A stretch of DNA of 64,000 nucleotides from Haplodiscus bocki (lineage: Eukaryota), in contig OZ296649.1 in the NCBI GenBank assembly GCA_965655095.1, forward strand, positions 95,356,001 through 95,420,000, written 5' to 3'. A program made the translations under genes and the position numbers. The notes under the pieces were generated by a model that did no database searches, had not been told where the DNA came from, and worked only from the letters and a program-made list of their open reading frames with translations. Positions 33,330 to 64,000 of this stretch are shown here, piece after piece. Every line of letters begins with the position of its first letter. Positions within the stretch are counted from its first letter, which is position 1.

Positions 33330-34053
33330 GCAACGTTGCGCCGTAAGCAGTATGACATTTTGTTAGGCTTTGCAGGGGCGTCCTTGATGCGGTTAGACCA
33401 GGATAGATTGCCACTTACGAGAACATCTAATCTTGTGTCATTGTGAGTGTTCTGAGCGGCTGTATGCTCAAGATCTTTCGTTTTGATTCGCTTTCGAAAT
33501 TAACTTCGCATTTGTTGCAGGCTTTGTCCATTTTGTAATTTCTGCCCCATTTTTGATTCTCGATAAGTAATATTGGAAATTTGAGGTCATCGGAAAAAGT
33601 ATATATCACTGTTTTATGATCTCGGGTATATCGTTGATAAAGAAAAAGAAAAGCGGCCCCAGCAATGAACCTTGGGGTACACCGCTCAACAGTGTCAACT
33701 CTTCTGAGCAGTGGTTCTCCAAACCAACAAATTGCTTGCGTCCTTCCAAGTAGTCAAAGAGAATGTCGAATAGGACGCCGCCGACTCCGATTTTGTCAAG
33801 TTTCTGTAGAAGCGGTTTATGGGGTACGCAATCAAAAGCTTCGGAGAAGTCTGCATAAAATTCTATTACTGATTCATTTGAGTTGTTATCTAGTGCTCCG
33901 TGGATATCCTGCAAAAAATTTAGCTTGTTACTGAATACATGTCGTTTCCTAACGGAACCATGTTGATTTTTGTCATTTGCATTGCATTGTGGATCGTAAA
34001 TGGACTTTTCAAATATTTTGCTATCAACATTGAGTAGTGATATTCCCGATGGT
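33330..34053 (-). pseudogene. Non-LTR retrotransposon (CR1/L2/Jockey-group) reverse transcriptase fragment
   Basis: ISLLNVDSKIFEK, NQHG, YADFSEAFDCVPH, SGVPQGSLLGPLFF..IND and FSDDLK, interrupted by stops and frameshifts. Confidence 0.9.
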
Positions 34054-35699: not shown

Positions 35700-36190
35700 T
35701 CAGCGTGAAAGTAGCCTTTTTCTACTCAACTGCGTTCCCAGTTTGTTCGAAATAGAAACGAATCGAAGCTTTGATGGAAGCATATATATACATGAGTCAC
35801 TGTATATCATGGGAAACATCGTTAAATGCTGGTACACTTGCAGTAAGGTTAGTGAGTAGTTCAACCCTGTTTTCCAACGTCTGCGCCATTGGTCAGTGAT
35901 AGATCCCGCAATTTGGTCATTAGTATACTCGAGAATGGTTTCCTTGTTCATAAATCGATTGTATCTCTTCAAACTTGATTCCAGTGATTTAGCTTGGCTG
36001 CGAGGTATACTAATCAATTTCAAGTGAGTATCCCGTACGAGACCATCATTCTGTCTAATTTTGATGGCGAATTTGATAGCTATGTTTTCGCAGTACATGT
36101 CAACCGGTGGTAATCCAGTCAATGCTTCACACGCCTCAATACAGGGTGATGGACCATGCTTGAAAATATTTCTCATAACATTGTTCTTGC
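35700..36190 (-). pseudogene. LINE ORF2 post-RT fragment (I/R1-like group)
   Basis: SPCIEACEALTGLPPVDMYCENIAIKF resembles the conserved 'T.P.EAL..LTGLPPL' post-RT motif. It is followed by a W-rich DQWRRRWK segment. Confidence 0.55.
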
Positions 36191-37088
36191 TGGCGAAGGT
36201 CAGAAAATATTAACATTAACATTGCTTAATGTAAGCAAAGAAAACGAGTGTATGAAAAAAGAGCTTTTATGACAAGCCGTTGAGAAAACAAGCAATTTCA
36301 AGACCTAAATGCATGAAAAAATCTTCGTTGATGACAAATGTTGTCAAAATGAAATATCAACTTGTTTTTAAAGTTTGTTTCGGACAAAAGCCTGTCGAAA
36401 AACTGATTGATTAAAACCAAAACTCAAAACAGATACGAGAGTTTCTTTGTCAAATCTGCGCTAAACATGGCTAAAATTGTCAAAATGTGTTTTCAAAAAC
36501 TTTCCGCATATTATTTCCTGAAAAATGTGGAGAAGAAAACAAATAATAATATTTAACGGAACTGATGCTTTTTGTTGTATGGAATGGCCACACTACCTGC
36601 GGAATAGTTTGATTAGCTTTATTACATATGTCGCGAACCAAACCAAAATTAAAATGACATCAAAATTTCTTGCCACAGAACCAATCGAAAAATTCATGGA
36701 TATCAATTGAGATTCAATATCTCAGAGCAGAGCGCCTTGCAAGAAGTTGTGCTGACTTTTGTTAAATGTGCTGACTAGGTAGAACAATTCATTTGTACTC
36801 GAGGTAAAATCCATCACATAGTTAGTTTGTCAGAATCTCTTGAAAGTCGGCTAGAAGACGTATATTTTCTGTATTAGCTTTTGACTGGTCGTGGCAGTTT
36901 CCAAAAGTTCCACGTAATCCTCAACAAATTAGCAAGAGCCCTTCGCCAGCGCCCCGAGGTAAAAAAAATGTTAATATGGTTAATGAAAAGTTAGTTCTAA
37001 CGATGTCTAACGAGGAAAGGCATTTTTTATTTACGTAAATGGGCATTGAATTTGTTGATTCTGTATGTAACAAGTTCAGGCAGTTTCG

Positions 37089-39885
37089 GTGAGGGAATTT
37101 TCAAATGAACCGACCCCACCCATATACACGAATGAAGGTAATAGAATTTTTAGCAAAGACACTGAAACCGGTCGAGAAGGCAACGAATGGATTTTTCACG
37201 GCATTATTCGTTCGCCTAATGAGAACTTTGAGAGTTCAGAGTTTTATTTAGAAACTTTGGGCATTATTAAGCCATCTGTTGTTTGTTTATCGGAAGCATG
37301 GAGATCAATTTTAAACGATTTTCGATTGTCATTTAAACAAATTTCATCCCGGCTTCAATGGAAATGACGTTGTTTTCGTTTATGTTCACGAATCCATCAA
37401 ATATGAGGTAGTAAGCACTAAAGCAAACCTATGTCATAATATCATTAGTGCAAAAAATAAAAACAACCAATATTTTGTTGTGGTTTACATGTACATCTCC
37501 GTCGATCAAACATTCTTTAATATTGAAGGAGATTGAATCGTTACAAACTGACATTTCCAATTCAATCGGGAACCCAGTTTTGATTAGAGGCGCTATGAAT
37601 CTTGAGCTTCGGAAACAAAACAAATTGTCTAATTATACAAAATTATTGCAGTATAACGGATTGTTGCATCCACTAACGACTGCAACACGAGTTGCCATAG
37701 ATTCAGCAACTCTGGTCGATCATGTATTTCATAATCATTTGTTGGATAATCCGGAATGTGTCATACTTGATGCTGGGTTAACTGACGGCTGTGTTAGTTT
37801 CGTGAAACTGTCAACCTATTGTAAAAAATATCATGTTACTGGAACTACATATAATGTTTCTCCTCTTATTTATATTGAAAATGCAAGACAAGCCTTTTTG
37901 GAAAGACTTTCAAAAGAACTGAAAATGCCAACTTCTATGATGATTTTCATGAGCAGTTTGAAATGTTTTTGAACCCATACATTTTAGTATTGAACTATGC
38001 AGTTCTGTGAAAAAACGCAAAAAAAATGTAAATCCCTTGGTTCAGTAGAAGAGGTAATAATGCTATCAGTAAGAAAAGACAGGCACTGAAGCGTTTTTGA
38101 AAAAGACCAACTGCTTCGATTAAAAGCAGACTCCTAAAAAACAATCGAAAGTGAACTAGTCGAAAAAACCAATTGTAATCATTTTTCAAAGGTCCCTTCA
38201 GAATGTATGAAAAAACCAAAAAAGTTTTATAGGACGCTTAACGAAACGACAGGTAAACGACGCGTGAAAACGAATCCGACAATTAATAATGGAAATAAAA
38301 ACAGCAAATATTCCGCTACAGTTTTTGCAGATATGTTCAAAAAAGTTTTCTTGATTGTGCAACTACTGTTGAAAGTCCCACCACACAGGAGCTCGAAGAA
38401 TATAATGAAAATTTTGATAATAATGATGGAGTGCATAAAACTTCAGTTCCCGGGCTTTTTTAGGTTTTAATTGAGTTTCTAAACCTATTTTGTCACGCGG
38501 TTGGTTCCTAAAGTGTCTGAAAGATGCAGTATTATATCCATTAGACAAACCGGGTGACATAATCAACATCAATAACTATAAGTCGGTTTCGAAAAAACCA
38601 GCCATCAGTGAAGTGGTCAAAATAATCATGTATGAACGATTATTTTCAATTTTCGACAAGAAAAATGTGTTTTATTAGAAGCTGTTTGTTTTATGTAGTA
38701 GACGAAGTACTATCAACGCCCTTGTTGAAGTTACAATACAAATTAGGCAAGGGAGTACTGGTACATTTACTTGTAAATTGGTTGATTTGCGTAAAGCATT
38801 TGATTCCAACATTCGTGAAATTTTGTTAAGTAAACTGGAAGGACAAAATGTCAAAAGAAATTGTTTAAATTGTGGCTTGAATCAAATCTAAAAGAACGAC
38901 GTCAGCGTGTTCGAGTGAAAAATGTACTTCCGGGTTTCTTGTACCTGCTGGCAGGAGTGCCGCGAAGCTCTATTCTTGGGCATCTACTGTTTTTTATATA
39001 CATCAGTGGTCTACCAGTTGCTTGTGAATTTCGCAAACCAATTTTTTTGATGACGACACGAATCATTTTCATCGCAAAAATCAAGATGAGTGGTTTTTGA
39101 TAAAAATCTTTTAGGGAAAAGTTCCGAAGTGGTTATCTGTCGATAAACTTGCTCTGGCTATCGATAAAACTCACGCTGTAGGCTTGTTGAAAACTCACGG
39201 CGAAGAGAATCGTTCAACAGATTCCTTTATTGAGTGAAGCACTTGTGTAAAACATCTAAGCGTTTTAATCGATATACCTTCAATTTTTAGTATTCATTTT
39301 GTTGAGGTAGCTAAAAAACTATCAAAACATCATTTAGTTATATCGCGATTGGGACAGTGTGTTAAAAAACCTGTGCTTCTCCAGTATTATAACACTCAAC
39401 TTACACGATTTATTGGAAATGGTCTCCTAATTCACGGCTGTACTTCAAAAACCAGAAGAAAATTTTTTATATTTTACAGAAAAAGATACTACGACAAGTT
39501 TGCTTTAAAGCTCGTTATTATCCATCTACAGAACTTTTTCATGAACTAAATATGTTAAATGTGTATCACTAATATAATGTTGAGCTTCTACTTTTTTCCT
39601 AATACATTTCGTCGTGTGCTAATAACTGAATATCTTAACTCGTTATATGATCCCAAAGTGTTTAACATTCAAACCATAATGTTCAACTTAAACTTTTTTT
39701 TGCCAAATCAACCATGCTCTGTTAGTCATTTTTCTTTGTGTTAACGGGCTGCAAAGCTGATTAATTGCCTCTTAGAAATAATTTTGGGTACGGTTGGTTT
39801 TCCGATAAGAATCAAGCGTAAACCATTAAAACACATGCAATTTGTAATGGTAAGGGATCAGACATCAAATACAAATTTTCAATGA
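37089..39885 (+). mobile_element. Degenerate LINE ORF2 (APE endonuclease + RT; CR1/L2/Crack/Daphne-like), progenitor of the tandem array
   Basis: Endonuclease motifs PSVVCLSEAW and ATRVAIDSATLVDHVF..GLTD; linker KKFYRTLNETTGK; RT motifs NNYKSVS..PAISEV, DLRKAFDS, GVPRSSILGHLLFFIYI and F-D-D-D-T (in place of FADDT). Many stops and frameshifts. Confidence 0.9.
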
Positions 39886-42800
39886 AATTGCTCATCATGG
39901 GCTGTTACTTTATTGTGGTCCTAATTTCATACTTCAGAGAATCCCCTCTGTTGGCGCTAATTGTAATATATATCTACAAAAATTTACTGTTATTTATATA
40001 CTTGAATCTTCTACGATTGTGTTGTTTGTTAATTGCTCCTCATCAGAGAAATTAACTCCATACTTCTAGTCTTATTCCTAACTGTCGGATGTGGCGACTG
40101 CTAGTCCTCCTCAGAAAGTCACACAGTACCGAGGGCCGCAAAATCAGCGATCCCGCTGCGTACTGGCGGTTAGGATCAGAGGGTGTTAATGGCCATAGGA
40201 AGGTAGTTGTTTCATTAAGGGTTTTTTGTATATCCTGCTGAGATGCTGAAATTCATAGGTCAGCTTGATGTAAAAGCCAATTGATCTCAAATCCTGAAAA
40301 ATTATTTGCAAAACGGCTTGAAAATCTCAACAACCAGAAAGCAGATGTCGTTTCTCACGATATTGATAAGTGTTGATGCTTTTGTTTGATGTACGCCTAC
40401 ATGAAAAAATTCATAAGTTGGAACCGGCACGGGAAATACTACTTGGAGAAGTTTTTCAGTCAGTAATTTTTGACTTTTCCAATTGCATGGAAAAATCAAA
40501 AAAGTTCTATAGGACGCTTAACGAAACGACTGGTAAACGAAGCGTGAAAACAAACTGAATAATTCAAAATGAAAAATCAAAAACACCATAAATTCCCGTA
40601 CAGTTATCGCGGAGATGTTCAAAAAAAATTTGTTAACTTTGCAACTACTGTTGAAGGTCCAACCACACAGGAGCTTAAAAAAATATTGAAAACTTTGACA
40701 ATAATGATGGAGTGCATAAAACTTCAGTTCCGGGGCTTTTCCAAGTTTTAATTGAGTTTCTAAACCTATTTTGTCAGGCGGTTGGATCCTAAAGTGTTTA
40801 AAGATTGAAATATTACATCCATTAGACAAGTCGGGTGACATGATGAACGTCAATAAATATAGGTCGGTTTCGGAATTACCAGCAATTAGTGAAGTGTTCG
40901 AGATAATCATATATGAACGATTATTTTCAGTGTTCGACTAGAAGAATATGATTCCTTCGAAGCTGTTTGGTTTTTGTAGTGGACGAAGTACTATCGACGC
41001 TCCTGCTGAAGTTACAAAACAAATTAGGCAAGGGAGTACTGATACATTTACATGTATATTGGTTGATTTGCCTAAAACAATTGTTTCCGTCATTCGCGAA
41101 AATTTTTAAGTAAACTGGAAAAAGATAATGTCAGAAGGAATTGTTTAAATTGTGGCTTGAATCATATTTAAAAGAACGACGTCAGTGTGTTCGAGTAAAA
41201 AATGTACTTCCGGGTTTCTTGTACCTGCTGGCAGGAGTACCGCAAAGCTCTATTCTTGGGCATCTACTGTTTTTCAATTACATCAGTGGTCTACCAGGTG
41301 CTTGTGAATTTCGCAAACCAATTTTTTTGATGACGACACGAATCTTTTTCACCGCAAACATCAAGATGGGTTGTTTTTGATAAAAATCTTTTAGGAAAAA
41401 GTTCCGATGTGGTTATCTGTCGATAAACTTGCTCTGGCTATCGATAAAACTCAAGCTGTAGGCTTTTTGAAAAATCACGGCGAGGAGATTCGTTCAACAG
41501 ATTCCATCTCTGAGCGAAGCAATTAAGTAATACATCTAGGTTTTTTAATCGATAAACCTTTAAACTTTAGTCTTCATTCTGCTGAGGTAGCTAAAAAACT
41601 TCCAAAACATCGTTTAGTAATATTTCGATTAAGAGACTGTGTTAAAACACCTGTGCTTCTCCAGTATTATAATACGCAACTTACACCATTTATTGGATAT
41701 GGTCTCCTAATATATGGCCGTACTTCAAAAACCTGAAAAAAAATTTGCTTATTCTACGGAAAAAGATACTATGACAAATTTGCTTTAAACCTCGTTATTA
41801 CCCATCTACAGAACTTTTTCAGGAACTAACTGTGTTAAATGTGTATGACTATTGTACTGTTGAGCTTCTACTTTTTTCTTGAATCAGTTCGTAGTGTTCG
41901 ACCAACAGAAAAATTATTTCGTTTTATGATCCCAAAGCATCTAATGTTCAAACCAAAAAGACCAACTTGAACTTTTTTGCCAAATCAACCATGCTCTTTT
42001 AGTCATTTTTTTTTGCGTTAACGGGCTGCAAAGCTGATCAATTGCCTCTTAGAAATATTTTTGGGTACGGTTGGTTTTCCGATAAGAATCAAGCGTAAAC
42101 CATTAAAACACATGCAATTTGTAATGGTAAGAGATCAGACATCAAATACAAATTTTCAATGAGATTGCTCATCATGTGCTGTTACTTTATTGTGGTCCTG
42201 ATTTCATACTTCAGAGAGTCCCCTCTGTTGGCGCTATTTGTAATATATATCTACATAAATTTACTGTTATTTATATACTTGAATCTTCTACGATTGTGTT
42301 GTTTGTTAATTGCTCCTCATCAGAGAAATTAACTCCATACTTCTAGTCTTATTCCTAACTGTCGGATGTGGCGACTGCTAGTCCTCCTCAGAAAGTCACA
42401 CAGTACCGAGGGGCGCAAAATCAGCGATCCCGCTGCGTACTGGCGGTTAGGATCAGAGGGTGTTAATGGCCATAGGAAGGTAGTTGTTTCATTAAGGGTT
42501 TTTTGTATATCCTGCTGAGATGCTGAAATTCATAGGTCAGCTTGATGTAAAAGCCAATTGATCTCAAATCCTGAAAAATTATTTGCAAAACGGCTTGAAA
42601 ATCTCAACAACCAGAAAGCAGATGTCGTTTCTCACGATATTGATAAGTGTTGATGCTTTTGTTTGATGTACGCCTACATGAAAAAATTCATAAGTTGGAA
42701 CCGGCACGGGAAATACTACTTGGAGAAGTTTTTCAGTCAGTAATTTTTGACTTTTCCAATTGCATGGAAAAATCAAAAAAGTTCTATAGGACGCTTAACG

Positions 42801-45800
42801 AAACGACTGGTAAACGAAGCGTGAAAACAAACTGAATAATTCAAAATGAAAAATCAAATACACCATAAATTCCCGTACAGATATCGCGCAGATGTTCAAA
42901 AAAAATTTGTTAACTTTGCAACTACTGTTGAAGGTCCAACCACACAGGAGCTTAAAGAAAATATTGAAAACTTTGACAATATTGATGGAGTGCATAAAAC
43001 TTCAGTTCCGGGGCTTTTCCAAGTTTTAATTGAGTTTCTAAACCTATTTTGTCAGGCGGTTGGATCCTAAAGTGTTTAAAGATTGAAATATTACATCCAT
43101 TAGACAAGTCGGGTGACATGATGAACGTCAATAAATATAGGTCGGTTTCGGAATTACCAGCAATTAGTGAAGTGTTCGAGATAATCATATATGAACGATT
43201 ATTTTCAGTGTTCGACTAGAAGAATATGATTCCTTCGAAGCTGTTTGGTTTTTGTAGTGGACGAAGTACTATCGACGCTCCTGTTGAAGTTACAAAACAA
43301 ATTAGGCAAGGGAGTACTGATACATTTACATGTATATTGGTTGATTTGCCTAAAACAATTGTTTCCGTCATTCGCGAAAATTTTTAAGTAAACTGGAAAA
43401 ATATAATGTCAGAAGGAATTGTTTAAATTGTGGCTTGAATCATATTTAAAAGAACGACGTCAGTGTGTTCGAGTAAAAAATGTACTTCCGGGTTTCTTGT
43501 ACCTGCTGGCAGGAGTACCGCAAAGCTCTATTCTTGGGCATCTACTGTTTTTCAATTACATCAGTGGTCTACCAGGTGCTTGTGAATTTCGCAAACCAAT
43601 TTTTTTGATGACGACACGAATCTTTTTCACCGCAAAAATCAAGATGGGTTGTTTTTGATTAAAATCTTTTAGGAAAAAGTTCCGATGTGGTTATCTGTCG
43701 ATAAACTTGCTCTGGCTATCGATAAAACTCGAGCTGTACGCTTTTTGAAAAATCACGGCGAAGAGATTCGTTCAACAGATTCCATCTTTGAGCGAAGCAA
43801 TTAAGTAAAACATCTAGTCTTTTTAATCGATAAACGTTTAAACTTTAGTCTTCATTCTGCTGAGGTAGCTAAAAAACTACCAAAACATCGTTTAATAATT
43901 TTTCGATTAAGACAATGTGTTAAAAAACCTGTGCTTCTCCAGTATTAAAAAACGCACCTCACACCAATTATTGGATATGGTCTCCTAATATATGGCCGTA
44001 CTCCAAAAACCTGAAAAAAAATGGCTTACTTTACGGAAAAAGATACTATGACAAATTTGCTTTAAACCTCGTTATTACCCATCTACAGAACTTTTTCAGG
44101 AACTAACTGTGTTAAATGTGTATGACTATTGTACTGTTGAGCTTCTACGTTTTTCTTGAATCAGTTCGTATTGTTCGACCAACAGGAAATTTAATTCGTT
44201 TTATGATCCCAAAGCATCTAATGTTCAAACCCAAAAGACCAACCTTAACTTTTTTTGCCGAATGAACCATGCTCTTTCAGTCATTTTTCTTTGCGTTACA
44301 GGGCTGCAAAGTTGATCAATTGCCTCTTAGAAACAAGTTTGGGTACGGTTGGTTTTCCGATAAGAATCAAGCGTAAACCATTAAAACACATGCAATTGGT
44401 AATAGTAAGAGATCAGACATCAAATACAAATTTTCAATGAGATTGCTCATCATGTGCTGTTACTTTATTGTGGTCCTGATTTCATACTTCAGAGAGTCCC
44501 CTCTGTTGGCGCTATTTGTAATATATATCTACATAAATTTACTGTTAATTATATACTTGAATCTTCTACGATTGTGTTGTTTGTTAATTGCTCCTCATCA
44601 GAGAAATTGACTCCATACTTCTAGTCTTATTCCTAACTGTCGGATGTGGCGACTGCTAGTCCTCCTCAGAAAGTCACACAGTACCGAGGGCCGCACAATC
44701 AGCGATCCCGCTGCGTACTGGCGGTTAGGATCAGAGGGTGTTAATGGCCATAGGAAGGTAGCTGTTTCATTACGGATATTTTGTATATACTCCTGAGATG
44801 CTGAAATTCAGGAGTCAGCTTGATGTAAAAGCCAATTGATCTCAAATCCTGAAAAATTATTTGCAAAACGGCTTGAAAATCTCAACAACCAGAAAACAGA
44901 CGTCGTTTCTCACGAAATTGATAAGTGTTGATGCTTTTGTTTGATGTTGGCCTACATGAAAAAATTCATAGGTGGGAACCGGCACGGGAAATACTACTTG
45001 GAGAAGTTTTTCAGTCAGTAATTTTTGACTTTTCCAATTGCATGGAAAAATCAAAAAAGTTCTATAGGACGCTCAACGAAACGACTGGTAAACAAAGCGT
45101 GAAAACAAACTGAATAATTCAAAATGAAAAAACAAAAACACCATAAATTCCCGTACAGTTATCGCGGAGATGTTCAAAAAAAATTTGTTAACTTTGCAAC
45201 TACTGTTGAAGGTCCAACCACACAGGAGTTTAAAGAAAATATTGAAAACTTTGACAATAATGATGGAGTGCATAAAACTTCAGTTCCGGGGCTTTTCCAA
45301 GTTTTAATTGAGTTTCTAAACCTATTTTGTCAGGCGGTTGGATCCCAAAGTGTTTAAAGATTGAAATATTACATCCATTAGACAAGTCGGCTGACATGAT
45401 GAACATCAATAAGTATAGGTCGGTTTCGGAATTACCAGCCATTAGTGAAGTGTTCGAGATAATCATATATGAACGATTATTTTCAGTGTTCGACTAGAAG
45501 AAAATGGTTCCTTTGAAGCTGTTTGGTTTTTGTAGTGGACGAAGTACTATCGACGCTCCTGCTGAAGTTACAAAACAAATTAGGCAAGGGAGTACTGATA
45601 CATTTACATGTATATTGGTTGATTTGCCTAAAACAATTGATTCCGTCATTCGTGAAATTTTTAAAGTAAACTGTAAAAATATAATGTCAGAAGGATTTGT
45701 TTCAATTGTGGCTTGAATCATATTTAAAAGAACAACGTCAGTGTGTTCGAGTAAAAAATGTACTTCCGGGCTTCTTGTACCTGATGGTAGGAGTACCGCA

Positions 45801-48800
45801 AAGCTCTATTCTTGGGCATCTACTGTTTTGCAATTACATCAGTGGTCTACCAGGTGCTGGTGAAAATCTCAACCCAATTTTTTTGATGACGACACGAATC
45901 TTTTTTATCGCAAAAATCAGGATGAGTTGTTTTTGATGAAAATCTTTTAGGAAAAAGTTCCGAAGTGGTTATCTGTCGATAAACTTGCTCTGGCTATCGA
46001 TAAAACTCAAGCTGTAGGCTCTTTGAAAAATCACGGCGAAGAGATTCGTTCAACAGATTCCATCTTTGAGCGAAGCAATTAAGTAAAACATCTAGGCTTT
46101 TTATTCGATAAACCTTTAAACTTTAGTCTTCATTCTGCTGAGGTAGCTAAAAAACTACCAAAACATCGTTTAGTAATATTTCGATTAAGACACTGTGTTA
46201 AAAAACCTGTGCTTCTCCAGTATTATAATACGCAACTTACACCATTTATTGGATATGGTCTCCTAATATATGGCCGTACTTCAAAAACTTGAAAAAAATT
46301 TGCTTATTTTACGGAAAAAGATACTATGACAAATTTGATTTAAACCTCGTTATTACCCATCTACAGAACTTTTTCAGGAACTAACTGTGTTAAATGTGTA
46401 TGACTATTGTACTGTTGAGCTTCCACTTTTTTCTTGAATCAGTTCGTAGTGTTCGACCAAAAGAAAATCTTAATTCGTTTTATGATCCCAAATCATCTAA
46501 TGTTCAAACCAAAAAGACCAACTTGAACTTTCTTGCCAAATGAACCATGCTCTTTTAGCCATTTTTCTTTGCGTTACAGGGCTGCAAAGCTGATCAATTG
46601 CCTCTTAGAAACAAGTTTCAGCACAGTTGGTTTTCCGATGAGAATCAAGCGTAAACCATTAAAACACATGCATTTTTTAATAGTAAGAGATCAGACAACA
46701 ATTACAAATTTTCAATGAGATTGCTCATCATGTGCTGTTACTTTATTGTTGTCCTGATTTCATACTTCAGAGGGTGCCCTCTGTTGGTGCTATTTGTAAT
46801 ATATATCTACATATATTTACTGTTTTTTATATACTTGTATTATTCAACGATTGTGTTGTTTGTTAATTGCTCCTCATCAGAGAAATTAACTCCATACTTC
46901 TAGTCTTATTCCTAACTGTCGGATGTGGTGACTGCTAGTCCTCCTCAGAAAGTCACACGGTACCGAGGGCCCCAAAATCAGCGATCCCGCTGCGTACTGG
47001 CGGTTAGGATCAGAGGGTGTTAATGGCCATAGGAAGGTAGCTGTTTCATTAAGGATTTTTTGTATATCCTGCTGAGATGCTGAAATTCATAGGTCAGCTT
47101 GATGTAAAGGCCAATTGATCTCAAATCCTGAAAAATTATTTGCAAAACGGCTTCAAAATCTCAACAACCAGAAAACAGACGTCGTTTCTCACGAAATTGA
47201 TAAGTGTTGATGCTTTTGTTTGATGTTCGCTGACATGAAAAAATTCATAGTTGGGAACCGGCACGGGAAATACTACTTGGAGAAGTTTTTCAGTCAGTAA
47301 TTTTTGACTTTTCCAATTGCATGGAAAAATCAAAAAAGTTCTATAGGACGCTTAACGAAACGACTGGTAAACGAAGCGTGAAAACAAACTGAATAATTCA
47401 AAATGAAAAATCAAAAACACCATAAATTCCCGTACAGTTATCGCGGAGATGTTCAAAAAAACTTGTTAACTTTGCAACTACTGTTGAAGGTCCAACCACA
47501 CAGGAGCTTAAAGAAAATATTGAAAACTTTGACAATAATGATGGAGTGCATAAAACTTCAGTTCCGGGGCTTTTCCAAGTTTTAATTGAGTTTCTAAACC
47601 TATTTTGTCAGGCGGTTGGATCCTAAAGTGTTTAAAGATTGAAATATTACATCCATTAGACAAGTCGGGTGACATGATGAACGTCAATAAGTATAGGTCG
47701 GTTTCGGAATTACCAGCCATTAGTGAAGTGTTCGAGATAATCATATATGAACGATTATTTTCAGTGTTCGACTAGAAGAATATGGTTCCTTCGAAGCTGT
47801 TTGGTTTTTGTAGTGGACGAAGTACTATCGACGCTCCTGCTGAAGTTACGAAACAAATTAGGCAAGGGAGTACTGATACATTTACATGTATATTGGTTGA
47901 TTTGCCTAAAACAATTGATTCCGTCATTCGTGAAATTTTTTAAGTAAACTGTAAAAATATAATGTCAGAAGGAATTGTTTAAATTGTGGCTTGAATCTTA
48001 TTTAAAAGAACGACGTCAGTGTGTTCGAGTAAAAAATGTACTTCCGGGTTTCTTGTACTTGCTGGTAGGAGTACCGCAAAGCTCTATTCTTGGGCATCTA
48101 CTGTTTTTCAATTACATCAGTGGTCTACCAGGTGCTGGTGAAATTCTCAACCCAATTTTTTTGATGACGACACGAATCTTTTTTATCGCAAAGATCAGGA
48201 TGAGTTGTTTTTGACAAAAATCTTTTAGGAAAAAGTTCCGAATTGGTTATATGTCGATAAAATTGCTCTGGCTATCGATAAAACTCACGCTGTAGGCTTG
48301 TTGAAAAATCACGGCGAAGAGAATCGTTCAACAGATTCCTTTATCGAGTGAAGCACTTGTGTAAAACGTCTAAGCATTTTAATCGATATACCTTTAAATT
48401 TTAGTAGTCATTTTGTTGAGGTAGCTAAAAAACTATCAAAACATCATTCAGTTATATCACGATTAGGACACTGTGTTAAAAAACCTGTGCTTCTCCAGTA
48501 TTATAATACGCACCTTACACCATTTATTGGATATGGTCTCCTAATATATGGCCGTACTTCAAAAACCTGAAAAAAATTTGCTTATTTTACGGAAAAAGAT
48601 ACTATGACGAATTTTCTTTAAACCTCGTTCTTACCCATCTACAGAAATTTTTCAGGAACTAACTGTGTTAAATGTGTATGACTATTGTACTGTTGAGCTT
48701 CTCTTTTTTTCTTGAATCAGTTCGTAGTGTTCGACCAACAGAAAATCTTAATTCGTTTTATAATCCCAAAGCATCTAATGTTTAAACCAAAAAACCAACT

Positions 48801-54800: not shown

Positions 54801-57800
54801 ATATAATGTCAGAAGGATTTGTTTCAATTGTGGCTCGAATCATATTTAAAAGAAAAACGTCAGTGTGTTCGAGTAAAAAATGTACTTCCGGGCTTCTTGT
54901 ACCTGCTGGTAGGGGTACCGCAAAGCTCTATTCTTGGGCATCTACTGTTTTTCAATTACATCAGTGGTCTACCAGGTGCTGGTGAAATTCTCAACCCAAT
55001 TTTTTTGATGACGACACGAATCTTTTTTTTCGCAAAAATCAGGATGAGTTGTTTTTGATAAAAATCTTTTAGGAAAAAGTTCCGAAGTGGTTATCTGTCG
55101 ATAAACTTGCTCTGGCTATCGATAAAACTCAAGCTGTAGGCTTTTTGAAAAATCACGGCGAAGAGATTCGTTCAACGGATTCCATCTTTGAGCGAAGCAA
55201 TTAAGTAAAACATCTAGGCTTTTTAATCGATAAACCTTTAAATTTTAGTCTTCATTCTGCTGATGTAGCTAAAAAACTACCAAAACATCGTTTAGTAATA
55301 TTTCGATTAGGACACTGTGTTAAAAAAGCTGTGCTTCTCCTTTATTATAATACGCAACTTACACCATTTATTGGATATGGTCTCCTAATATATGGCCGTA
55401 CTTCAAAAACCTGAACTAAAATTTGCTTATTTTACGGAAAAAGATACTTTGACGAATTTGCTTTAAACCTCGTTATTATCCACCTGCAGAATTTTTGAGG
55501 AACTAACTGTGTTAAAAGTGTATGACTATTGTACTGTTGAGCTTCTACTTTTTTCTTGAATCAGTTCGTAGTGTTCGACCAACAGAAAATCATAATTCGT
55601 TTTATGATCCCAAAGCATCTAATGTTCAAACCAAAAAACCAACTTGAACTTTTTTTGCCAAATGAACCCTGCTCTTTTAGTCATTTTTCTTTGCGTTACA
55701 GGGCTGCAAAGCTGATCAATTGCCTCTTAGAAACAAGTTTGGGCACAGTTGGTTTTTCGATGAGAATCAAGCGTAAACCATTAAAACACATGCATTTTTT
55801 AGTAGTAAGAGATCAGACATCAATTGCAAATTTTCAATGAGATTGCTCATCATGTGCTGATACTTTATTGTGGTCCTGATTTCATACTTCAGAGGGTGCC
55901 CTCTGTTGGTGCTATTTGTAATATATATCTACATATATTTACTGTTTTTTATATACTTGTATTATTCTACGATTGTGTTGTTTGTTAACTGCTCCTCATC
56001 AGAGAAATTAACTCCATACTTCTAGTCTTATTCCTAACTCTCGGATGTGGCGACTGCTAGTCCTCCTCAGAAAGTCACACAGTACCGAGGGCCGCACAAT
56101 CAGCGATCCCGCTGCGTACTGGCGGTTAGGATCAGAGGGTGTTAATGGCCATAGGAAGGTAGCTGTTTCATTACGGATATTTTGTATATACTCCTGAGAT
56201 GCTGAAATTCAGGAGTCAGCTTGATGTAAAAGCCAATTGATCTCAAATCCTGAAAAATTATTTGCAAAACGGCTTGAAAATCTCAACAACCAGAAAACAG
56301 ACGTCGTTTCTCACCAAATTGATATGTGTTGATGCTTTCGTTTGATGTTCGCCTACATGAAAAAATTCATAGGTGGGAACCGGCACGGGAAAACTACTTG
56401 GAGAAATTTTTCAGTCAGTAATTTTTGACTTTTCCAATTGCATGGAAAAATCAAAAAAGTTCTATAGGACGCTTAACGAAACGACTGGTAAACGAAGCGT
56501 GAAAACAAACTGAATAATTCAAAATGAAAAATCAAATACACCATAAATTCCCGTACAGATATCGCGCAGATGTTCAAAAAAAATTTGTTAACTTTGCAAC
56601 TACTGTTGAAGGTCCAACAACACAGGAGCTTAAAGAAAATATTGAAAACTTTGACAATAATGATGGAGTGCATAAAACTTCAGTTCCGGGGCTTTTCCAA
56701 GTTTTAATTGAGTTTCTAAACCTATTTTGTCAGGCGGTTGGATCCCAAAGTGTTTAAAGATTGAAATATTACATCCATTAGACAAGTCGGCTGACATGAT
56801 GAACATCAATAAGTATAGGTCGGTTTCGGAATTACCAGCCATTAGTGAAGTGTTCGAGATAATCATATATGAACGATTATTTTCAGTGTTCGACTAGAAG
56901 AATATGGTTCCTTCGAAGCTGTTTGGTTTTTGTAGTGGACGAAGTACTATCGACTCTCCTGCTGAAGTTACAAAACAAATTAGGCAAGGGAGTACTGATA
57001 CATTTACATGTATATTGGTTGATTTGCCTAAAACAATTGATTGCGTCATTCGCGAAAATTTTTAAGTAAACTGGAAAAATATAATGTCAGAAGGAATTGT
57101 TTAAATTGTGGCTTGAATCATATTTAAAAGAACGACGTCAGTGTGTTCGAGTAAAAAATGTACTTCCGGGTTTCTTGTACCTGCTGGCAGGAGTACCGCA
57201 AAGCTCTATTCTTGGGCATCTACTGTTTTTCAATTACATCAGTGGTCTACCAGGTGCTGGTGAAATTCTCAACCCAATTTTTTTGATGACGACACGAATC
57301 TTTTTTTTCGCAAAAATCAGGATGAGTTGTTTTTGATAAAAATCTTTTAGGAAAAAGTTCCGAAGTGGTTATCTGTCGATAAACTTGCTCTGGCTATCGA
57401 TAAAACTCAAGCTGGAGGCTTTTTGAAAAATCACGGCGAAGAGATTCGTTCAACGGATTCCATCTATGAGCGAAGCAATTAAGTAAAACATCTAGGCTTT
57501 TTAATCGATAAACCTTTAAATTTTAGTCTTCATTCTGCTGAGGTAGCTAAAAAACTACCAAAACATCGTTTAGTAATAATTCGATTAGGACACTGTGTTA
57601 AAAAAGCTGTGCTTCTCCTTTATTATAATACGCAACTTACAACATTTATTGGATATGGTCTCCTAATATATGGCCGTACTTCAAAAACCTGAACTAAAAT
57701 TTGCTTATTTTACGGAAAAAGATACTATGACAAATTTGCTTTAAACCTCGTTATTATCCACCTGCAGAATTTTTGAGGAATTAACTGTGTTAAAAGTGTA

Positions 57801-60800
57801 TGACTATTGTACTGTTGAGCTTCTACTTTTTTCTTGAATCAGTTCGTAGTGTTCGACCAACAGAAAATCATAATTCGTTTTATGATCCCAAAGCATCTAA
57901 TGTTCAAACCAAAAAACCAACTTGAACTTTTTTTGCCAAATGAACCCTGCTCTTTTAGTCATTTTTCTTTGCGTTACAGGGCTGCAAAGCTGATCAATTG
58001 CCTCTTAGAAACAAGTTTGGGCACAGTTGGTTTTTCGATGAGAATCAAGCGTAAACCATTAAAACACATGCATTTTTTAGTAGTAAGAGATCAGACATCA
58101 ATTGCAAATTTTCAATGAGATTGCTCATCATGTGCTGATACTTTATTGTGGTCCTGATTTCATACTTCAGAGGGTGCCCTCTGTTGGTGCTATTTGTAAT
58201 ATATATCTACATATATTTACTGTTTTTTATATACTTGTATTATTCTACGATTGTGTTGTTTGTTAATTGCTCCTCATCAGAGAAATTAACTCCATACTTC
58301 TAGTCTTATTCCTAACTGTCGGATGTGGCGACTGCTAGTCCTCCTCAGAAAGTCACACAGTACCGAGGGCCCCAAAATCAGCGATCCCGCTGCGTACTGG
58401 CGGTTAGGATCAGAGGGTGTTAATGGCCATAGGAAGGTAGCTGTTTCATTACGGATATTTTGTATATACTCCTGAGATGCTGAAATTCAGGAGTCAGCTT
58501 GATGTAAAAGCCAATTGATCTCAAATCCTGAAAAATTATTTGCAAAACGGCTTGAAAATCTCAAGAACCAGAAAACAGACGTCGTTTCTCACGAAATTGA
58601 TAAGTGTTGATGCTTTTGTTTGATGTTCGCTGACATGAAAAAATTCATAGTTGGGAACCGGCACGGGAAATACTACTTGGAGAAGTTTTTCAGTCAGTAA
58701 TTTTTGACTTTTCCAATTGCATGGAAAAATCAAAAAAGTTCTATAGGGCGCCTAACGAAACGACTGGTAAACGAAGCGTGAAAACAAACTGAATAATTCA
58801 AAATGAAAAATCAAAAACACCATAAATTCCCGTACGGTTATCGCGGAGATTTTCAGAAAAAATTTGTTAACTTTGCAACCACTGTTGAAGGTCCAACCAC
58901 GCAGGAGTTTAAAGAAAATATTGAAAACTTTGACAATAATGATGGAGTGCATAAAACTTCAGTTCCGGGGCTTTTCCAAGTTTTAATTGAGTTTCTAAAC
59001 CTATTTTGTCAGGTGGTTGGATCCTAAAGTGTCTAAAGATTGAAATATTATATCCATTAGACAAGTCGGGTGACATGACGGACATCAATAAATATAGGTC
59101 TGTTTCGGAATTACAAGCCATTAGTGAAGTGTTCGAGATAATCATATATGAACGATTATTTTCAGTTTTCGACTAGAAGAATATGGTTCCTTCGAAGCTG
59201 TTTGGTTTTTGTAGTGGACGAAGTACTATCGACGCTCCTGTCGAAGTTACAAAACAAATTAGGCAAGGGAGTACTGATACATTTACATGTATATTGGTTG
59301 ATTTGCCTAAAACAAATGATTCCGTCATTCGTGAAATTTTTAAAGTAAACTGTAAAAATATAATGTCAGAAGGATTTGTTTAAATTGTGGCTTGAATCAT
59401 ATTTAAAAGAACAACGTCAGTGTGTTCGAGTAAAAAATGTACTTCCGGGCTTCTTGTACCTGCTGGTAGGAGTACCGCAAAGCTCTATTCTTGGGCATCT
59501 ACTGTTTTTCTTTTACATCAGTGGTCTACCAGGTGCTGGTGAAATTCTCAACCCATTTTTTTTGATGACGACACGAATCTTTTTCATGGCAAAAATCAGG
59601 ATGAGTTGTTTTTGATAAAAATCTTTTAGGGCAAAGTTCCGAAGTGGTTATCTGTCGATAAACTTGCTCTGGCCTCTGGCTATCGATAAAACTCAAGCTG
59701 TAGGCTTTTTGAAAAATCACGGCGAAGAGATTCGTTCAACAGATTCCATCTTTGAGCGAAGCAATTAAGTAAAACATCTAGGTTTTTTAATCGATAAACC
59801 TTTAAACTTTAGTCTTCATTCTGCTGAGGTAGCTAAAAAACTACCAAAACATCGTTTAGTAATATCTCGATTAAGACACTGTGTTAAAAAAACCTGTGCT
59901 TCTCCAGTATTATGATACTAACCTTAAACTATTTATTGGATATGGTCTCCTAATATATGGCCGCACTCCAAAAACTTGAAAAAAAAATTGCTTATTTTAT
60001 GGAAAAAGATACTATGACGAATTTGCTTTAAACCTCGTTCTTACCCATCTACAGAACTTTTTCAGGAACTAAATGTGTTAAAGGTGTATGACTATTGTAC
60101 TGTTTAGGTTCTACTTTTTTCTTGAATCAGTTCGTAGTGTTTGACCAACAGAAAATCTTAATTCGTTTTTTGATCCCAAAGCATCTAAAGCTCAAACCAA
60201 AAAGACCAACTTGAACTTTTTTTGCCAAATGAACCATGCTCTTTTAGTCATTTTTCTTTGCGTTACAGGGCTGCAAAGCTGATCAATTGCCTCTTAGAAA
60301 CAAGTTTGGGCACAGTTGGTTTTTCGATGAGAATCAAGCGTAAACCATTAAAACACATGCATTTTTTAATAGTAAGAGATCAGACATCAATTACAAATTT
60401 TCAACGAGATTGCTCATCATGTGCTGTTACTTTACTGTGGTCCTGATTTCATACTTCAGAGGGTCCCCTCTGTTGGTGCTATTTGTAATATATATCTACA
60501 TATATTTACTGTTTTTATATACTTGTTTTATTCTACGATTGTGTTGTTTGTTAATTGTTCCTCATCAGAGAAATTAACTCCATACTTCTGGTCCTATTCT
60601 TAACTGTCGGATGTGGCGACCGCTACTCCTCCTCAGAAAGTCACACGGTACCGAGGGCCTTAAAATCAGCGATCCCGCTGCGTACTGGCGGTTGGGATCA
60701 GAGTGTGTTAATGGCCATAGGAAAGTAGCTGTTTCATTAGGGATTTTTTGTAAATGCTGCTGAGATGCTGAAATTTATAGGTCAGCTTAATGTAAAAGCC

Positions 60801-63800
60801 AATTGATCTCAAATCCTGAAAAATTATTTGCAAAACGGCTTGAAAATCTCAACAACCAGAAAACAGACGTCGTTTCTCACCAAATTGATATGTGTTGATG
60901 CTTTCGTTTGATGTTCGCCTACATGAAAAAATTCATAGGTGGGAACCGGCACGGGAAAACTACTTGGAGAAATTTTTCAGTCAGTAATTTTTGACTTTTC
61001 CAATTGCATGGAAAAATCAAAAAAGTTCTATAGGACGCTTAACGAAACGACTGGTAAACGAAGCGTGAAAACAAACTGAATAATTCAAAATGAAAAATCA
61101 AATACACCATAAATTCCCGTACAGATATCGCGCAGATGTTCAAAAAAAATTTGTTAACTTTGCAACTACTGTTGAAGGTCCAACAACACAGGAGCTTAAA
61201 GAAAATATTGAAAACTTTGACAATAATGATGGAGTGCATAAAACTTCAGTTCCGGGGCTTTTCCAAGTTTTAATTGAGTTTCTAAACCTATTTTGTCAGG
61301 CGGTTGGATCCCAAAGTGTTTAAAGATTGAAATATTACATCCATTAGACAAGTCGGCTGACATGATGAACATCAATAAGTATAGGTCGGTTTCGGAATTA
61401 CCAGCCATTAGTGAAGTGTTCGAGATAATCATATATGAACGATTATTTTCAGTGTTCGACTAGAAGAATATGGTTCCTTCGAAGCTGTTTGGTTTTTGTA
61501 GTGGACGAAGTACTATCGACTCTCCTGCTGAAGTTACAAAACAAATTAGGCAAGGGAGTACTGATACATTTACATGTATATTGGTTGATTTGCCTAAAAC
61601 AATTGATTGCGTCATTCGCGAAAATTTTTAAGTAAACTGGAAAAATATAATGTCAGAAGGAATTGTTTAAATTGTGGCTTGAATCATATTTAAAAGAACG
61701 ACGTCAGTGTGTTCGAGTAAAAAATGTACTTCCGGGTTTCTTGTACCTGCTGGCAGGAGTACCGCAAAGCTCTATTCTTGGGCATCTACTGTTTTTCAAT
61801 TACATCAGTGGTCTACCAGGTGCTGGTGAAATTTTCAACCCAATTTTTTTGATGACGACACGAATCTTTTTTTTCGCAAAAATCAGGATGAGTTGTTTTT
61901 GATAAAAATCTTTTAGGAAAAAGTTCCGAAGTGGTTATCTGTCGATAAACTTGCTCTGGCTATCGGTAAAACTCAAGCTGGAGGCTTTTTGAAAAATCAC
62001 GGCGAAGAGATTCGTTCAACAGATTCCATATTTGAGCGAAGCAATTAAGTAAAACATCTAGGTTTTTTAATCGATAAACCTTTAAACTTTAGTCTTCATT
62101 CTGCTGAGGTAGCTAAAAAACTACCAAAACATCGTTTAGTAAAATCTCGATTAAGACACTGTGTTAAAAAAACCTGTGCTTCTCCAGTATTATGATACTC
62201 ACCTCAAACTGTTTATTGGATATGGTCTCCTAATATATGGCCGTACTCCAAAAAATTGAAAAAAAATTTGCTTATTTTACGGAAAAAGACACTATGACGA
62301 ATTTGCTTTAAACCTCGTTCTTACCCATCTACAGAACTTTTTCAGGAACTAAATGTGTTAAAGGTGTATGACTATTGTACTGTTTAGGTTCTACTTTTTT
62401 CTTGAATCAGTTCGTAGTGTTTGACCAACAGAAAATCTTAATTCGTTTTTTGATCCCAAAGCATCTAAAGCTCAAACCAAAAAGACCAACTTGAACTTTT
62501 TTTGCCAAATGAACCATGCTCTTTTAGTCATTTTTCTTTGCGTTACAGGGCTGCAAAGCTGATCAATTGCCTCTTAGAAACAAGTTTGGGCACAGTTGGT
62601 TTTTCGATGAGAATCAAGCGTAAACCATTAAAACACATGCATTTTTTAATAGTAAGAGATCAGACATCAATTACAAATTTTCAACGAGATTGCTCATCAT
62701 GTGCTGTTACTTTACTGTGGTCCTGATTTCATACTTCAGAGGGTCCCCTCTGTTGGTGCTATTTGTAATATATATCTACATATATTTACTGTTTTTATAT
62801 ACTTGTTTTATTCTACGATTGTGTTGTTTGTTAATTGTTCCTCATCAGAGAAATTAACTCCATACTTCTGGTCCTATTCTTAACTGTCGGATGTGGCGAC
62901 CGCTACTCCTCCTCAGAAAGTCACACGGTACCGAGGGCCTTAAAATCAGCGATCCCGCTGCGTACTGGCGGTTGGGATCAGAGTGTGTTAATGGCCATAG
63001 GAAAGTAGCTGTTTCATTAGGGATTTTTTGTAAATGCTGCTGAGATGCTGAAATTTATAGGTCAGCTTAATGTAAAAGCCAATTGATCTCAAATCCTGAA
63101 AAATTATTTGCAAAACGGCTTGAAAATCTCAACAACCAGAAAACAGAAGTAGTTTCTCACAAAACTGATAGGTGTTGATGCTTTTGTTTGATATTCGCCT
63201 TTATGAAAAATTTGATAGGTGGGAACCGGCACAGGAAATACTACTTGGAGAAGTTTTTCAGTCAGTAAGATTTGACTTTTCTAATTGAATGGAAATATCC
63301 AAAAAGTTCTATAGGACAATTAACAAAACGACTGGTAAAGGAAGCGTGAAAACAAACTCAATAATTCAAAATGAAAAATGAAAAACCATAAATTCCCGTA
63401 CAGTTATTGCGGATATGTTCAAAAAAGTTTTGTTAACTTTGCAACTACTGTTGAAGGTCCAACCACACCGGATCTCAAAGAAAATATTGAAAATTTTGAA
63501 AATATTGATGGAGTGCATACAACTTCAGTTCCGGGGCATTTTTAGGTTTTAATTGAGTTTCTAAATTAATTTTGTCACGCAGTTGGTTCCTAAAGTGTCT
63601 AAAGATTGCAATATTATATCCATTAGCAAGTCGGGTTGCAAAATGAACATCAATAAATATAGGTCGGTTTCGAAATTACCAGCCATTAGTGAAGTGTTCC
63701 AGATAATCATATATGAACGAATTTTTTTAGTTTTCGACTAGAAGAATATGTTTCATTCGCAGCTGTTTGATTTTTGTTGTGGACGAAGTACTATCGACGC

Positions 63801-64000
63801 TCCTGTTGAAGTTATAAAACAAATTAGGCAAGGGAGTACTGATACATTTACATGTATATTGGTTGATTTGCCTAAATTAATTGATTCCGTCATTCGTGAA
63901 AACTTTAAACTAAACTGGAAAAATATAATGTCAGAAGGAAATGTTTAAATTGTGGCTTGAATCATATTTAAAAGAACGACGTCAGTGTGTTCGAGTAAAA
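38204..64000 (+). repeat. LINE-derived macrosatellite: head-to-tail ~2.28-kb units, 11 complete plus 1 partial, open at the right edge
   Basis: Units start at about 38204, 40484, 42761, 45039, 47318, 49602, 51881, 54161, 56439, 58718, 61005 and 63286. The marker ORF MF(K/Q)LWLES recurs at 38861, 41141, 43419, 45697, 47975, 50260, 52539, 54819, 57097, 59376 and 61663 (spacing 2278-2287). Confidence 0.97.

What the first reader, a model, noticed from the sequence alone, without database searches (positions are those of the whole stretch)
38204..64000. A dead LINE reverse-transcriptase region turned into a >25-kb macrosatellite, with its progenitor still attached
Seen: the endonuclease half of the LINE (37089-38200) occurs once. 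Every unit restarts at the same internal ORF2 breakpoint (TG(T/C)ATG.AAAA..CAAAAAAG, just before KKFYRTLNE) and carries the RT region, the C-terminus and ~600 bp of downstream sequence. All copies share the same lesions (FDDDT instead of FADDT, the same frame breaks around the GVPQ motif). Inference: amplification happened at the DNA level after the element died (unequal exchange or rolling-circle/eccDNA reinsertion), not by repeated retrotransposition. This is a rare snapshot of satellite birth from a TE. The array could act as a piRNA/siRNA source against the active LINE family, or as a heterochromatin or centromere-like domain ~6 kb upstream of the zinc-finger gene.
Basis: partly seen in the sequence, partly recalled or inferred. 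Interest (0 to 1): 0.8.

Follow-up and report, generated by a model that had tools for sequence, protein, structure and literature searches.

The report
Old tandem array from dead LINE
A 2.28-kb piece of DNA, made of the back two thirds of one dead jumping gene (a LINE) plus 390 bases of its neighbourhood, was copied head to tail about 22 times in place; it is a cleanly resolved but ordinary example of repeat DNA born from a transposon, and this genome holds many like it.

Summary
A head-to-tail array with a period of about 2,279 bp starts at window ~38195. It runs 25 kb past the window end, giving 22.4 units and ~51 kb in the assembly.

- **Unit content:** each unit holds a LINE from an internal point to its 3' end (~1.89 kb) plus 391 bp of flank.
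- **Origin in place:** the flank continues an older dispersed repeat ("X") that the LINE split exactly. X's left part lies just upstream of the LINE's single-copy 5' part, so the array arose at this site.
- **DNA-level copying:** the X|LINE joint is the same in all 22 junctions and occurs nowhere else in the 1.5-Gb genome. The units share lesions that dispersed copies lack (FDDDT, a 1-bp frameshift, a ~110-bp deletion).
- **Not a birth snapshot:** units differ by 1-19%. The tree shows layers: old distal units, a middle block, and a young core (U02-U11), which is the part seen in the window.
- **Edges:** U01 is an edge unit, not an unamplified master copy. The distal end is cut off.
- **Function:** nothing supports one. 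Divergence is flat along the unit, there is no Rfam hit and no CpG decay, and the unit occurs at one locus only.

I confirmed four more kb-unit arrays on this chromosome. This scan had already described several TE-derived arrays of this kind elsewhere in this genome. Known kind, low interest.

The parts
36773..36927 (-). Left relic of the older dispersed repeat X, ending exactly where the LINE was inserted. X's ORFs lie on the minus strand.
   Evidence: Sensitive blastn: window 36773-36923 matches L036:461-607 and seven other X copies at 70-75%.
36928..38194 (+). Single-copy 5' remainder of the 5'-truncated LINE (endonuclease region and linker). It is contiguous with unit 1.
   Evidence: Collinear with five ~3.9-kb dispersed copies from their position ~618 onward, at 73-75%. 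It occurs once. The homologous ORF of a dispersed copy scores 0.96 to Exo_endo_phos clusters. Pfam Exo_endo_phos is below threshold, E=0.021. A read contig bridges 37986-38441 at single-copy depth.
38195..40084 (+). LINE part of unit U01: RT region to the 3' end with a TTCTTA-like tail. It carries FDDDT, a 1-bp frameshift and a ~110-bp deletion at ~38427.
   Evidence: An RVT_1 domain is found in a homologous dispersed copy (E=1.5e-9).
40085..40475 (-). Right relic of repeat X: the LINE's original 3' flank and the non-LINE part of every unit.
   Evidence: Window 40085-40476 matches L036:612-1015, directly continuing the left relic, which ends at L036:607. A weaker search found the same family for 40244-40470.
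40452..40497 (+). First duplication junction. X (about position 1015) is joined to the internal LINE point. The breakpoint lies after 40475, give or take ~12 nt, with a possible imperfect microhomology.
   Evidence: Alignments. The junction probe hits 22 times, only in this array.
40476..63277 (+). Units U02-U11, the young core (94-99% identical to each other). Junctions lie after 42752, 45030, 47309, 49593, 51872, 54152, 56431, 58709, 60997 and 63277.
63278..64000 (+). Start of U12. The array continues 25.2 kb beyond the window (U12-U23, 81-93% identity) and ends cut off inside the RT region at G000:C2:95445208.

Best explanation
This is a composite, transposon-derived macrosatellite that arose and grew in place, and it most likely has no function.

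1. An APE-type LINE of a now long-dead ~3.9-kb family inserted, 5'-truncated, into an old copy of a 3.3-kb dispersed repeat, X. This step is shown by the sequence.
2. After the copy had picked up a ~110-bp deletion, a 1-bp frameshift and an Ala-to-Asp change in the RT motif, a 2.28-kb segment was duplicated in tandem. The segment ran from an internal LINE point to 391 bp into the X flank. The new joint is X|LINE-internal. The joint is shown. That a short imperfect microhomology mediated it is inferred.
3. The two-copy seed then grew and turned over for a long time by unequal exchange between misaligned units, mostly with offsets of one unit and at least once of two units, together with gene conversion. 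This step is inferred from the tree and its match to physical order. It left old, unhomogenised units at the distal side and a young core next to the proximal edge unit.
4. A later deletion or rearrangement cut the distal end.
For: - **Array size:** period ~2279 bp, 22.4 units, ~51 kb.
- **Empty site rebuilt:** X left relic 36773-36927 matches L036:461-607 and X right relic 40085-40475 matches L036:612-1015, so the LINE sits in one clean gap of X.
- **One original LINE:** the LINE is collinear across 38194/38195 with dispersed copies.
- **One joint:** the same joint occurs 22 times and nowhere else in 1.5 Gb.
- **Shared lesions** are absent from dispersed copies.
- **Common origin:** units are monophyletic against five dispersed copies, with a stem of 0.096 substitutions per site.
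- **Layered growth:** tree layers follow physical order. Sister neighbours are U02/03, U06/07, U08/09, U10/11 and U13/14. U16/18 and U17/19 show a two-unit duplication.
- **Mosaic kinship:** near the 3' part of the unit, U03 is closest to U08/U09, but over the whole unit it is closest to U02.
- **No constraint:** divergence is flat along the unit.
- **Read depth** fits single-copy edges and a multi-copy core.
- **Known route:** the literature describes this path for TE-derived and composite arrays (PMC5932611; PMC12628747; bioRxiv 10.1101/2021.07.12.451456).
Against: - The distal end does not run into the rest of X, as a simple in-place model predicts. U23 stops at unit position ~930 and unrelated DNA follows, so a second event has to be assumed.
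- Sequence alone cannot tell unequal exchange from replication-based or circle-based amplification for any single step.
- No long reads or population data were available. Copy number and polymorphism are unverified, and the short-read runs may come from the assembled individual.
- Absence of function is argued from a lack of signals, not shown.
Confidence: 0.82

Rival explanations
1. Circle-based amplification. The 2.28-kb segment was cut out as an extrachromosomal circle, closing at the X|LINE microhomology. It was copied by rolling-circle replication, and the concatemer re-entered its own locus by homologous recombination. This would explain either the first step or the burst that made the young core.
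For: One invariant joint that is exactly a circle-closing joint. Ten units at 94-99% identity form a compact block. Earlier scan notes report abundant rolling-circle (Helitron-like) elements in this genome; these are unchecked leads.
Against: The tree is layered, not star-like, and depths run from ~0.005 to ~0.11 substitutions per site. Sister pairs are physical neighbours, and there is a two-unit duplication, as stepwise unequal exchange predicts. The array sits in register with the progenitor's 5' part. No hairpin or Helitron-like end motif was looked for or seen at the joint.
Confidence: 0.1
2. The array is kept because it does something, for example as a small-RNA source against the LINE family, a heterochromatin block that affects the C2H2 zinc-finger gene 5.7 kb away, or a centromere-like domain.
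For: Position: 5.7 kb from the 5' end of a minus-strand C2H2 zinc-finger gene. The array shares some exact 24-mers with dispersed LINE copies, 7-55 per copy. Divergence dips slightly (0.10 against 0.11-0.18) in the GC-rich part just after the LINE end.
Against: - No part of the unit is clearly conserved.
- There is no Rfam family and no RNA run on record.
- The LINE family appears extinct, with copies 72-79% identical to the unit and broken, so there is no evident target.
- CpG o/e is 0.93-1.0 and CpG sites are not hypermutable, so there is no sign of germline methylation.
- The unit occurs at one 51-kb locus at 95.4 Mb of a 151.7-Mb contig and is not shared between chromosomes.
- Many unrelated sequences form similar arrays in this genome.
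Confidence: 0.06
3. Assembly artefact: a few copies were inflated by the assembler.
For: No long reads were inspected. The only runs found belong to one study and may be the source sample.
Against: Units differ by 1-19%, have their own indels (lengths 2243-2303 bp) and form a nested tree that follows position. Depth of word-based contigs rises several-fold on the young units over single-copy flanks in all four runs.
Confidence: 0.02
4. Repeated retrotransposition into one site, or 3' transduction of the flank.
For: Each unit ends with a LINE 3' end plus downstream flank, as a read-through transcript would.
Against: All 22 units restart at the same internal base, where independent 5' truncations would differ. 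There is no tail or target-site duplication at the joints, and the joint is found at no other locus.
Confidence: 0.01

Closest known systems
Composite macrosatellites of the complete human genome (Hoyt et al., bioRxiv 10.1101/2021.07.12.451456)
   Same: The kb-sized core unit is built from TE pieces plus other repeats. It is arrayed in tandem, mostly on one chromosome, cannot retrotranspose, and its growth is ascribed to unequal crossing over.
   Different: The unit here has only two parts (a LINE 3' portion and a relic of repeat X) and no gene. The progenitor insertion and its empty site can still be read at the array's edge. This is a different organism.
TE-derived satellites seeded by tandem TE dimers (McGurk and Barbash 2018, PMC5932611; reviews PMC12628747, PMC6947457, PMC9659126)
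   Same: A transposon sequence becomes the monomer of a tandem array, which then expands by recombination.
   Different: The seed here was not a double insertion of whole elements. It was a tandem duplication of an internal LINE segment together with flanking DNA, so the joint is flank|LINE-internal rather than TE end|TE start.
Other single-locus TE-derived arrays noted by this scan in the same genome (for example s1-359328, s1-354063, s1-366627, s1-376443)
   Same: Units of 1-2.3 kb and arrays of 40-92 kb. Each is built from one dead TE copy with or without flank, at one locus, and was read as decaying DNA.
   Different: A different TE segment and locus. I checked only that four arrays exist at the stated places, not their origin.

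Membership tests
TE-derived / composite macrosatellite | Head-to-tail tandem copies of a unit of about 1 kb or more | tested here: met
   Period 2277-2288 bp, 22.4 units.
TE-derived / composite macrosatellite | The unit contains recognisable TE sequence joined to other DNA | tested here: met
   LINE part is 73-79% identical to dispersed copies. The 391-bp X relic is shown.
TE-derived / composite macrosatellite | Amplified as DNA: one invariant junction, not mobile | tested here: met
   22 identical junctions, none elsewhere in the genome.
TE-derived / composite macrosatellite | Copy number varies between individuals | not testable with these tools
   Only word-based contigs of one study were available.
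APE-type LINE (non-LTR retrotransposon) | Reverse-transcriptase domain | tested here: met
   RVT_1 at E=1.5e-9 in dispersed copy L012, which is collinear with the units. The window's own broken ORF pieces gave no Pfam hit, but the GVPQ and F(A/D)DDT motifs are readable.
APE-type LINE (non-LTR retrotransposon) | Apurinic-type endonuclease domain upstream of the RT | tested here: inconclusive
   Pfam Exo_endo_phos scores only E=0.021, below its cut-off. PDB hits to sphingomyelinases of the same superfamily score E~0.1. The feature search scores 0.96, with 20 of 30 hits in Exo_endo_phos clusters.
APE-type LINE (non-LTR retrotransposon) | Insertion marks: 5' truncation, 3' tail, target-site duplication | tested here: inconclusive
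   5' truncation of ~618 bp and a TTCTTA-like tail are seen. No target-site duplication is visible at the clean X gap. The clade was not assigned.
Centromeric satellite | Large arrays of the same monomer, usually shared between chromosomes; CENP-A binding | tested here: not met
   The unit occurs at one 51-kb locus only. CENP-A binding is not testable here.
piRNA cluster / small-RNA source | Dense small RNAs map to it; it holds sequence of active TEs | not testable with these tools
   No RNA run on record. The LINE family looks extinct. Few exact 24-mers are shared with dispersed copies.

The most novel reading that the evidence does not exclude
This array may be one product of a genome-wide process in this animal-like genome. 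That process would turn arbitrary 1-2.4-kb segments (LINE pieces, DNA transposons, Maverick and virus genes, tRNA genes) into single-locus arrays of a similar total size (about 40-90 kb in the ten cases with a measured length). A specific amplification mechanism, or a length-limited equilibrium, would then be at work rather than generic, occasional unequal exchange. The window's array, with both the progenitor and the joint legible, would be a good substrate for working it out.
Probability: 0.2. Interest if true: 0.6.

Novelty: new member of a known kind. Interest (0 to 1): 0.25.

Why it matters
It adds little on its own. Satellites and macrosatellites born from transposons are well documented.

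Its value is as a fully legible case. The sequence still shows:
- the target (repeat X) and the clean LINE insertion into it;
- the lesions acquired before the first duplication;
- the single duplication joint;
- the layered growth of the array.

That makes it a usable exemplar for dating and modelling array turnover. Taken with the many similar arrays in this genome, it could also help ask whether this species has an unusual tendency to make kb-unit arrays.

Tried and rejected
- **Tandem Repeats Finder** missed the array because its longest period is 500. The repeat finder and blastn found it.
- **Pfam on the window's own LINE ORF pieces** gave nothing. I had to go through dispersed copies.
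- **PDB sequence searches** with the endonuclease and RT pieces gave nothing significant, so the LINE clade stays unassigned.
- **Rfam** on 36000-45000 gave no family.
- **The bacterial-type promoter/terminator scan** is irrelevant here and was not above chance.
- **Search for the lost distal flank** (the rest of X) in the 55 kb after the array found nothing.
- **Locally conserved segment** (the sister note on 40081-40200): only a slight dip in divergence, 0.10 against 0.11-0.18. That stretch is simply the start of the X relic.
- **CpG-decay test for germline methylation:** negative. For that count a majority vector of the units was held in memory only; it was neither printed nor saved.
- **Repeat X:** no Pfam family. 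A feature search points weakly to class-I viral fusion glycoproteins, with a recognition value below the tool's guide mark. If X is part of an env-bearing retroelement it counts as proviral, so I only observed it and built no consensus.
- **One earlier-note array** was not found at my first coordinate guess (L048). The offset is measured from the finding's end, and the corrected place was confirmed.
- **Failed script calls:** two tree runs failed on the thread setting and one fuzzy-regex script timed out. All were redone by other means.
- **Organism:** names are coded, and I did not try to unmask them.
Full report

Yes. The repeat finder gives 12 in-register copies with start-to-start spacings of 2277-2288 bp. 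A blastn of one unit (42700-44977) tiles the window from 38204 to 64000 without gaps. Tandem Repeats Finder missed it only because its longest period is 500.

The window is G000:C2:95356001-95420000 of a 1.5-Gb assembly. Fetching 80 kb downstream shows that the array goes on for another 25.2 kb, to C2:95445208. That gives 22.4 units and ~51 kb. There are no N runs.

**2. Anatomy of the unit**

Dispersed relatives of the unit in the same genome match only its LINE part, at 72-79% identity.

Five copies with longer flanks share a common 5' end, which defines a family of ~3.9 kb. The window copy is collinear with them from their position ~618 to their 3' end, across window 36926-40081. So it is one 5'-truncated LINE, and the stretch before ~38195 occurs once.

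- **RT domain.** A dispersed copy gives Pfam RVT_1 at E=1.5e-9.
- **Endonuclease domain.** The upstream ORF of another copy looks like Exo_endo_phos by the feature search (0.96, 20 of 30 hits). Pfam is below its cut-off (E=0.021), and PDB hits are not significant.
- **3' end.** The LINE ends in a TTCTTA-like tail at 40084.

The remaining 391 bp of each unit (40085-40475) is not LINE. A sensitive blastn shows it matches positions 612-1015 of a 3.3-kb dispersed repeat that I call X. The 155 bp just upstream of the LINE (36773-36927) matches X positions 461-607. The LINE therefore sits in one clean gap of an old X copy, and the flank carried by every unit is this locus's own DNA. This is the strongest evidence that the array arose in place.

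**3. The junction**

Each unit ends in X at about position 1015 and restarts at the same internal LINE point, which corresponds to ~38195 in U01. The KKFYR motif follows just after it.

- An 80-nt probe centred on the joint hits 22 times at 85-100% identity. All hits are in the array, and 11 lie in the window.
- In a whole-genome search with a 301-nt probe, only places inside the array span the joint. Elsewhere the matches stop at it, from the LINE side or the X side.
- There is no tail, no target-site duplication and no variable truncation. This excludes repeated retrotransposition or transduction.
- X and the LINE are loosely alike around the breakpoint (ATTGnATnAA-like), so a microhomology-mediated first duplication is possible. 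At this level of divergence the breakpoint can only be placed to about 12 nt either way.

**4. Shared lesions**

Relative to dispersed copies, the array units differ in three ways:
- They read FDDDT, where three dispersed copies read FADDT.
- GVPQ and FDDDT are 92 nt apart in U01-U11 and U21, against 93 nt in a dispersed copy. That is a 1-bp frameshift.
- They lack ~110 bp at ~38427. This was seen directly in U01 and U02, and the other units align to U03 without large gaps.

With the 5' truncation, the copy was dead before it was amplified.

**5. Age and growth**

Pairwise identities:

| Units | Identity |
|---|---|
| U02-U11 (the block in the window), to each other | 94-99% |
| U12-U14, to U02-U11 | ~90% |
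| U15-U23, to the others | 81-90% |
| U01, to the others | 81-89% |

A maximum-likelihood tree with five dispersed copies as outgroup shows the following:
- The units are monophyletic, on a stem of 0.096 substitutions per site.
- The deepest branches are the distal units U21-U23. Next come U15-U20. Then comes a clade of U01 with (U12-U14, U02-U11), supported at 99%.
- Depth inside the array is ~0.10-0.12. Dispersed copies have terminal branches of 0.14-0.18.

So the first duplications are old, and the window shows the youngest layer.

Sister pairs are physical neighbours (U02/03, U06/07, U08/09, U10/11, U13/14). U16/18 and U17/19 record a two-unit duplication. Kinship is mosaic along the unit: in the 3' part, U03 is 99% identical to U08/U09, but overall it is closest to U02.

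These are the marks of stepwise unequal exchange with some gene conversion. A single burst would give a star-like tree. U01 is the edge unit, not an untouched master copy.

**6. The distal end**

U23 stops at unit position ~930, just after the FDDDT site. Unrelated DNA follows, and about 170 bp further on an abundant dispersed TE begins. The rest of X, which a simple model predicts after the last unit, is not found within 55 kb. A later deletion or rearrangement must be assumed.

**7. Is it an artefact?**

Unlikely. Units have private substitutions and indels (lengths 2243-2303 bp) and form a tree that follows position.

Word-based contigs from four runs (two samples, one study, possibly the source individual) were laid on 37500-43400:
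- Depth is single-copy on the LINE 5' part and on U01 (for example ~54-66 in X2).
- One contig bridges 37986-38441 with no differences.
- Contigs in the young units have depths of 170-250 in X2. Summed bin depths reach ten-fold or more, although the tool warns that summed depth is not a copy number.

No long reads were available.

**8. Function**

- Divergence among old units is flat along the unit, at 0.10-0.18 per 100-bp bin. There is only a slight dip in the GC-rich start of the X relic, which is the stretch flagged by sister note s1-356435.
- There is no Rfam family.
- CpG o/e is 0.93-1.0, and CpG sites change about as often as other G/C sites. There is no sign of germline methylation.
- No run on record is RNA.
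- The LINE family looks extinct in the 17 copies examined. The array shares only 7-55 exact 24-mers with each of them.
- The array lies 5.7 kb from the 5' end of a minus-strand C2H2 zinc-finger gene. Nothing links the two.

I rate a retained function at about 6%.

**9. Context in this genome**

Earlier notes of this scan describe many single-locus arrays built from TE or virus pieces in the same genome, and 96 notes use the word macrosatellite. These are unchecked leads.

I fetched four of the stated places on the same chromosome, and all four are tandem arrays:

| Place on C2 | Period |
|---|---|
| 25.75 Mb | 1.12 kb |
| 29.71 Mb | 2.0 kb |
| 120.22 Mb | 1.97 kb |
| 120.36 Mb | 1.84 kb |

So the kind of object is common here. 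The scan had already found and followed up arrays like this one on other DNA of this genome.

**10. Comparison with what is known**

TE-derived satellites and their routes of origin are reviewed in PMC12628747, PMC6947457 and PMC9659126. McGurk and Barbash (PMC5932611) show tandem TE dimers as seeds that recombination expands.

The complete human genome paper on repeats (bioRxiv 10.1101/2021.07.12.451456) defines 'composite' units of TEs plus other repeats. These are arrayed as macrosatellites, mostly on one chromosome, and are ascribed to unequal crossing over. The present array fits that kind.

It differs in two ways. Its seed was a duplication of an internal LINE segment with flank, rather than a double insertion. 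And the progenitor, empty site and joint are all still readable.

**11. Verdict**

The DNA-level, in-place origin is supported. 'Snapshot of birth', rarity and the functional ideas are not supported. It is a new member of a known kind, of low interest in itself.

The one reading worth a follow-up is genome-wide: why this genome holds so many kb-unit arrays of 40-90 kb.

- Repeat X may be part of an env-bearing retroelement (weak lead) and was only observed.

Noticed in passing
L051:6074-8000 + L036:1-1405 (G000:C9:57640074-57643405); relics at window 36773-36927 and 40085-40475: Repeat X is a 3.3-kb dispersed family whose copies are 86-95% alike. It has two long minus-strand ORFs (about 388 and 349 aa) with no Pfam hit. 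A feature search places one ORF near class-I viral fusion glycoproteins (hemagglutinin, F0, Baculo_F/Gypsy env) at 0.91-0.94, but its recognition value is below the tool's guide mark. It may be the env region of a retrovirus-like element.
   Followed up: partly
G000:C2:25745001-25755000, 29710001-29720000, 120222001-120232000, 120355001-120365000 (L053, L054, L050, L049): Four more tandem arrays with kb-sized units (1.12, 2.0, 1.97 and 1.84 kb; copies 85-99% alike) lie on the same chromosome. The ten arrays with a measured length in the scan notes, including this one, are all 40-92 kb long. That range may reflect how they were picked, or a real size limit.
   Followed up: partly
L022:5521-6000 (5' region of a full-length copy of the LINE family): A 160-aa ORF in the family's 5' ~600 bp contains YGRRDNIRFFGVEE, which from memory resembles the RRM motif of L1-type ORF1 proteins. 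Pfam did not call it. The window copy lacks this region.
   Followed up: no
window 33427-33914 (-) and 35700-36176 (-): Pieces of another dead LINE lie on the opposite strand (RVT_1 at E=2e-7 for 33606-33911), between the zinc-finger gene and the array. The array sits in a TE-rich intergenic stretch.
   Followed up: partly
window 16371-18797 (-) and 29402-32472 (-): Two C2H2 zinc-finger genes on the minus strand. The first has an 808-aa open exon (zf-C2H2 at E=2e-27). The second is in at least three ORF pieces, and its 5' end lies 5.7 kb from the array.
   Followed up: partly
L015:5379-6400 (G000:C2:95445379-95446400): A very abundant dispersed repeat (more than 1,700 first-look candidates, 76-85% identity) begins about 170 bp after the cut distal end of the array. 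It contains a 35-37-nt inverted segment.
   Followed up: no
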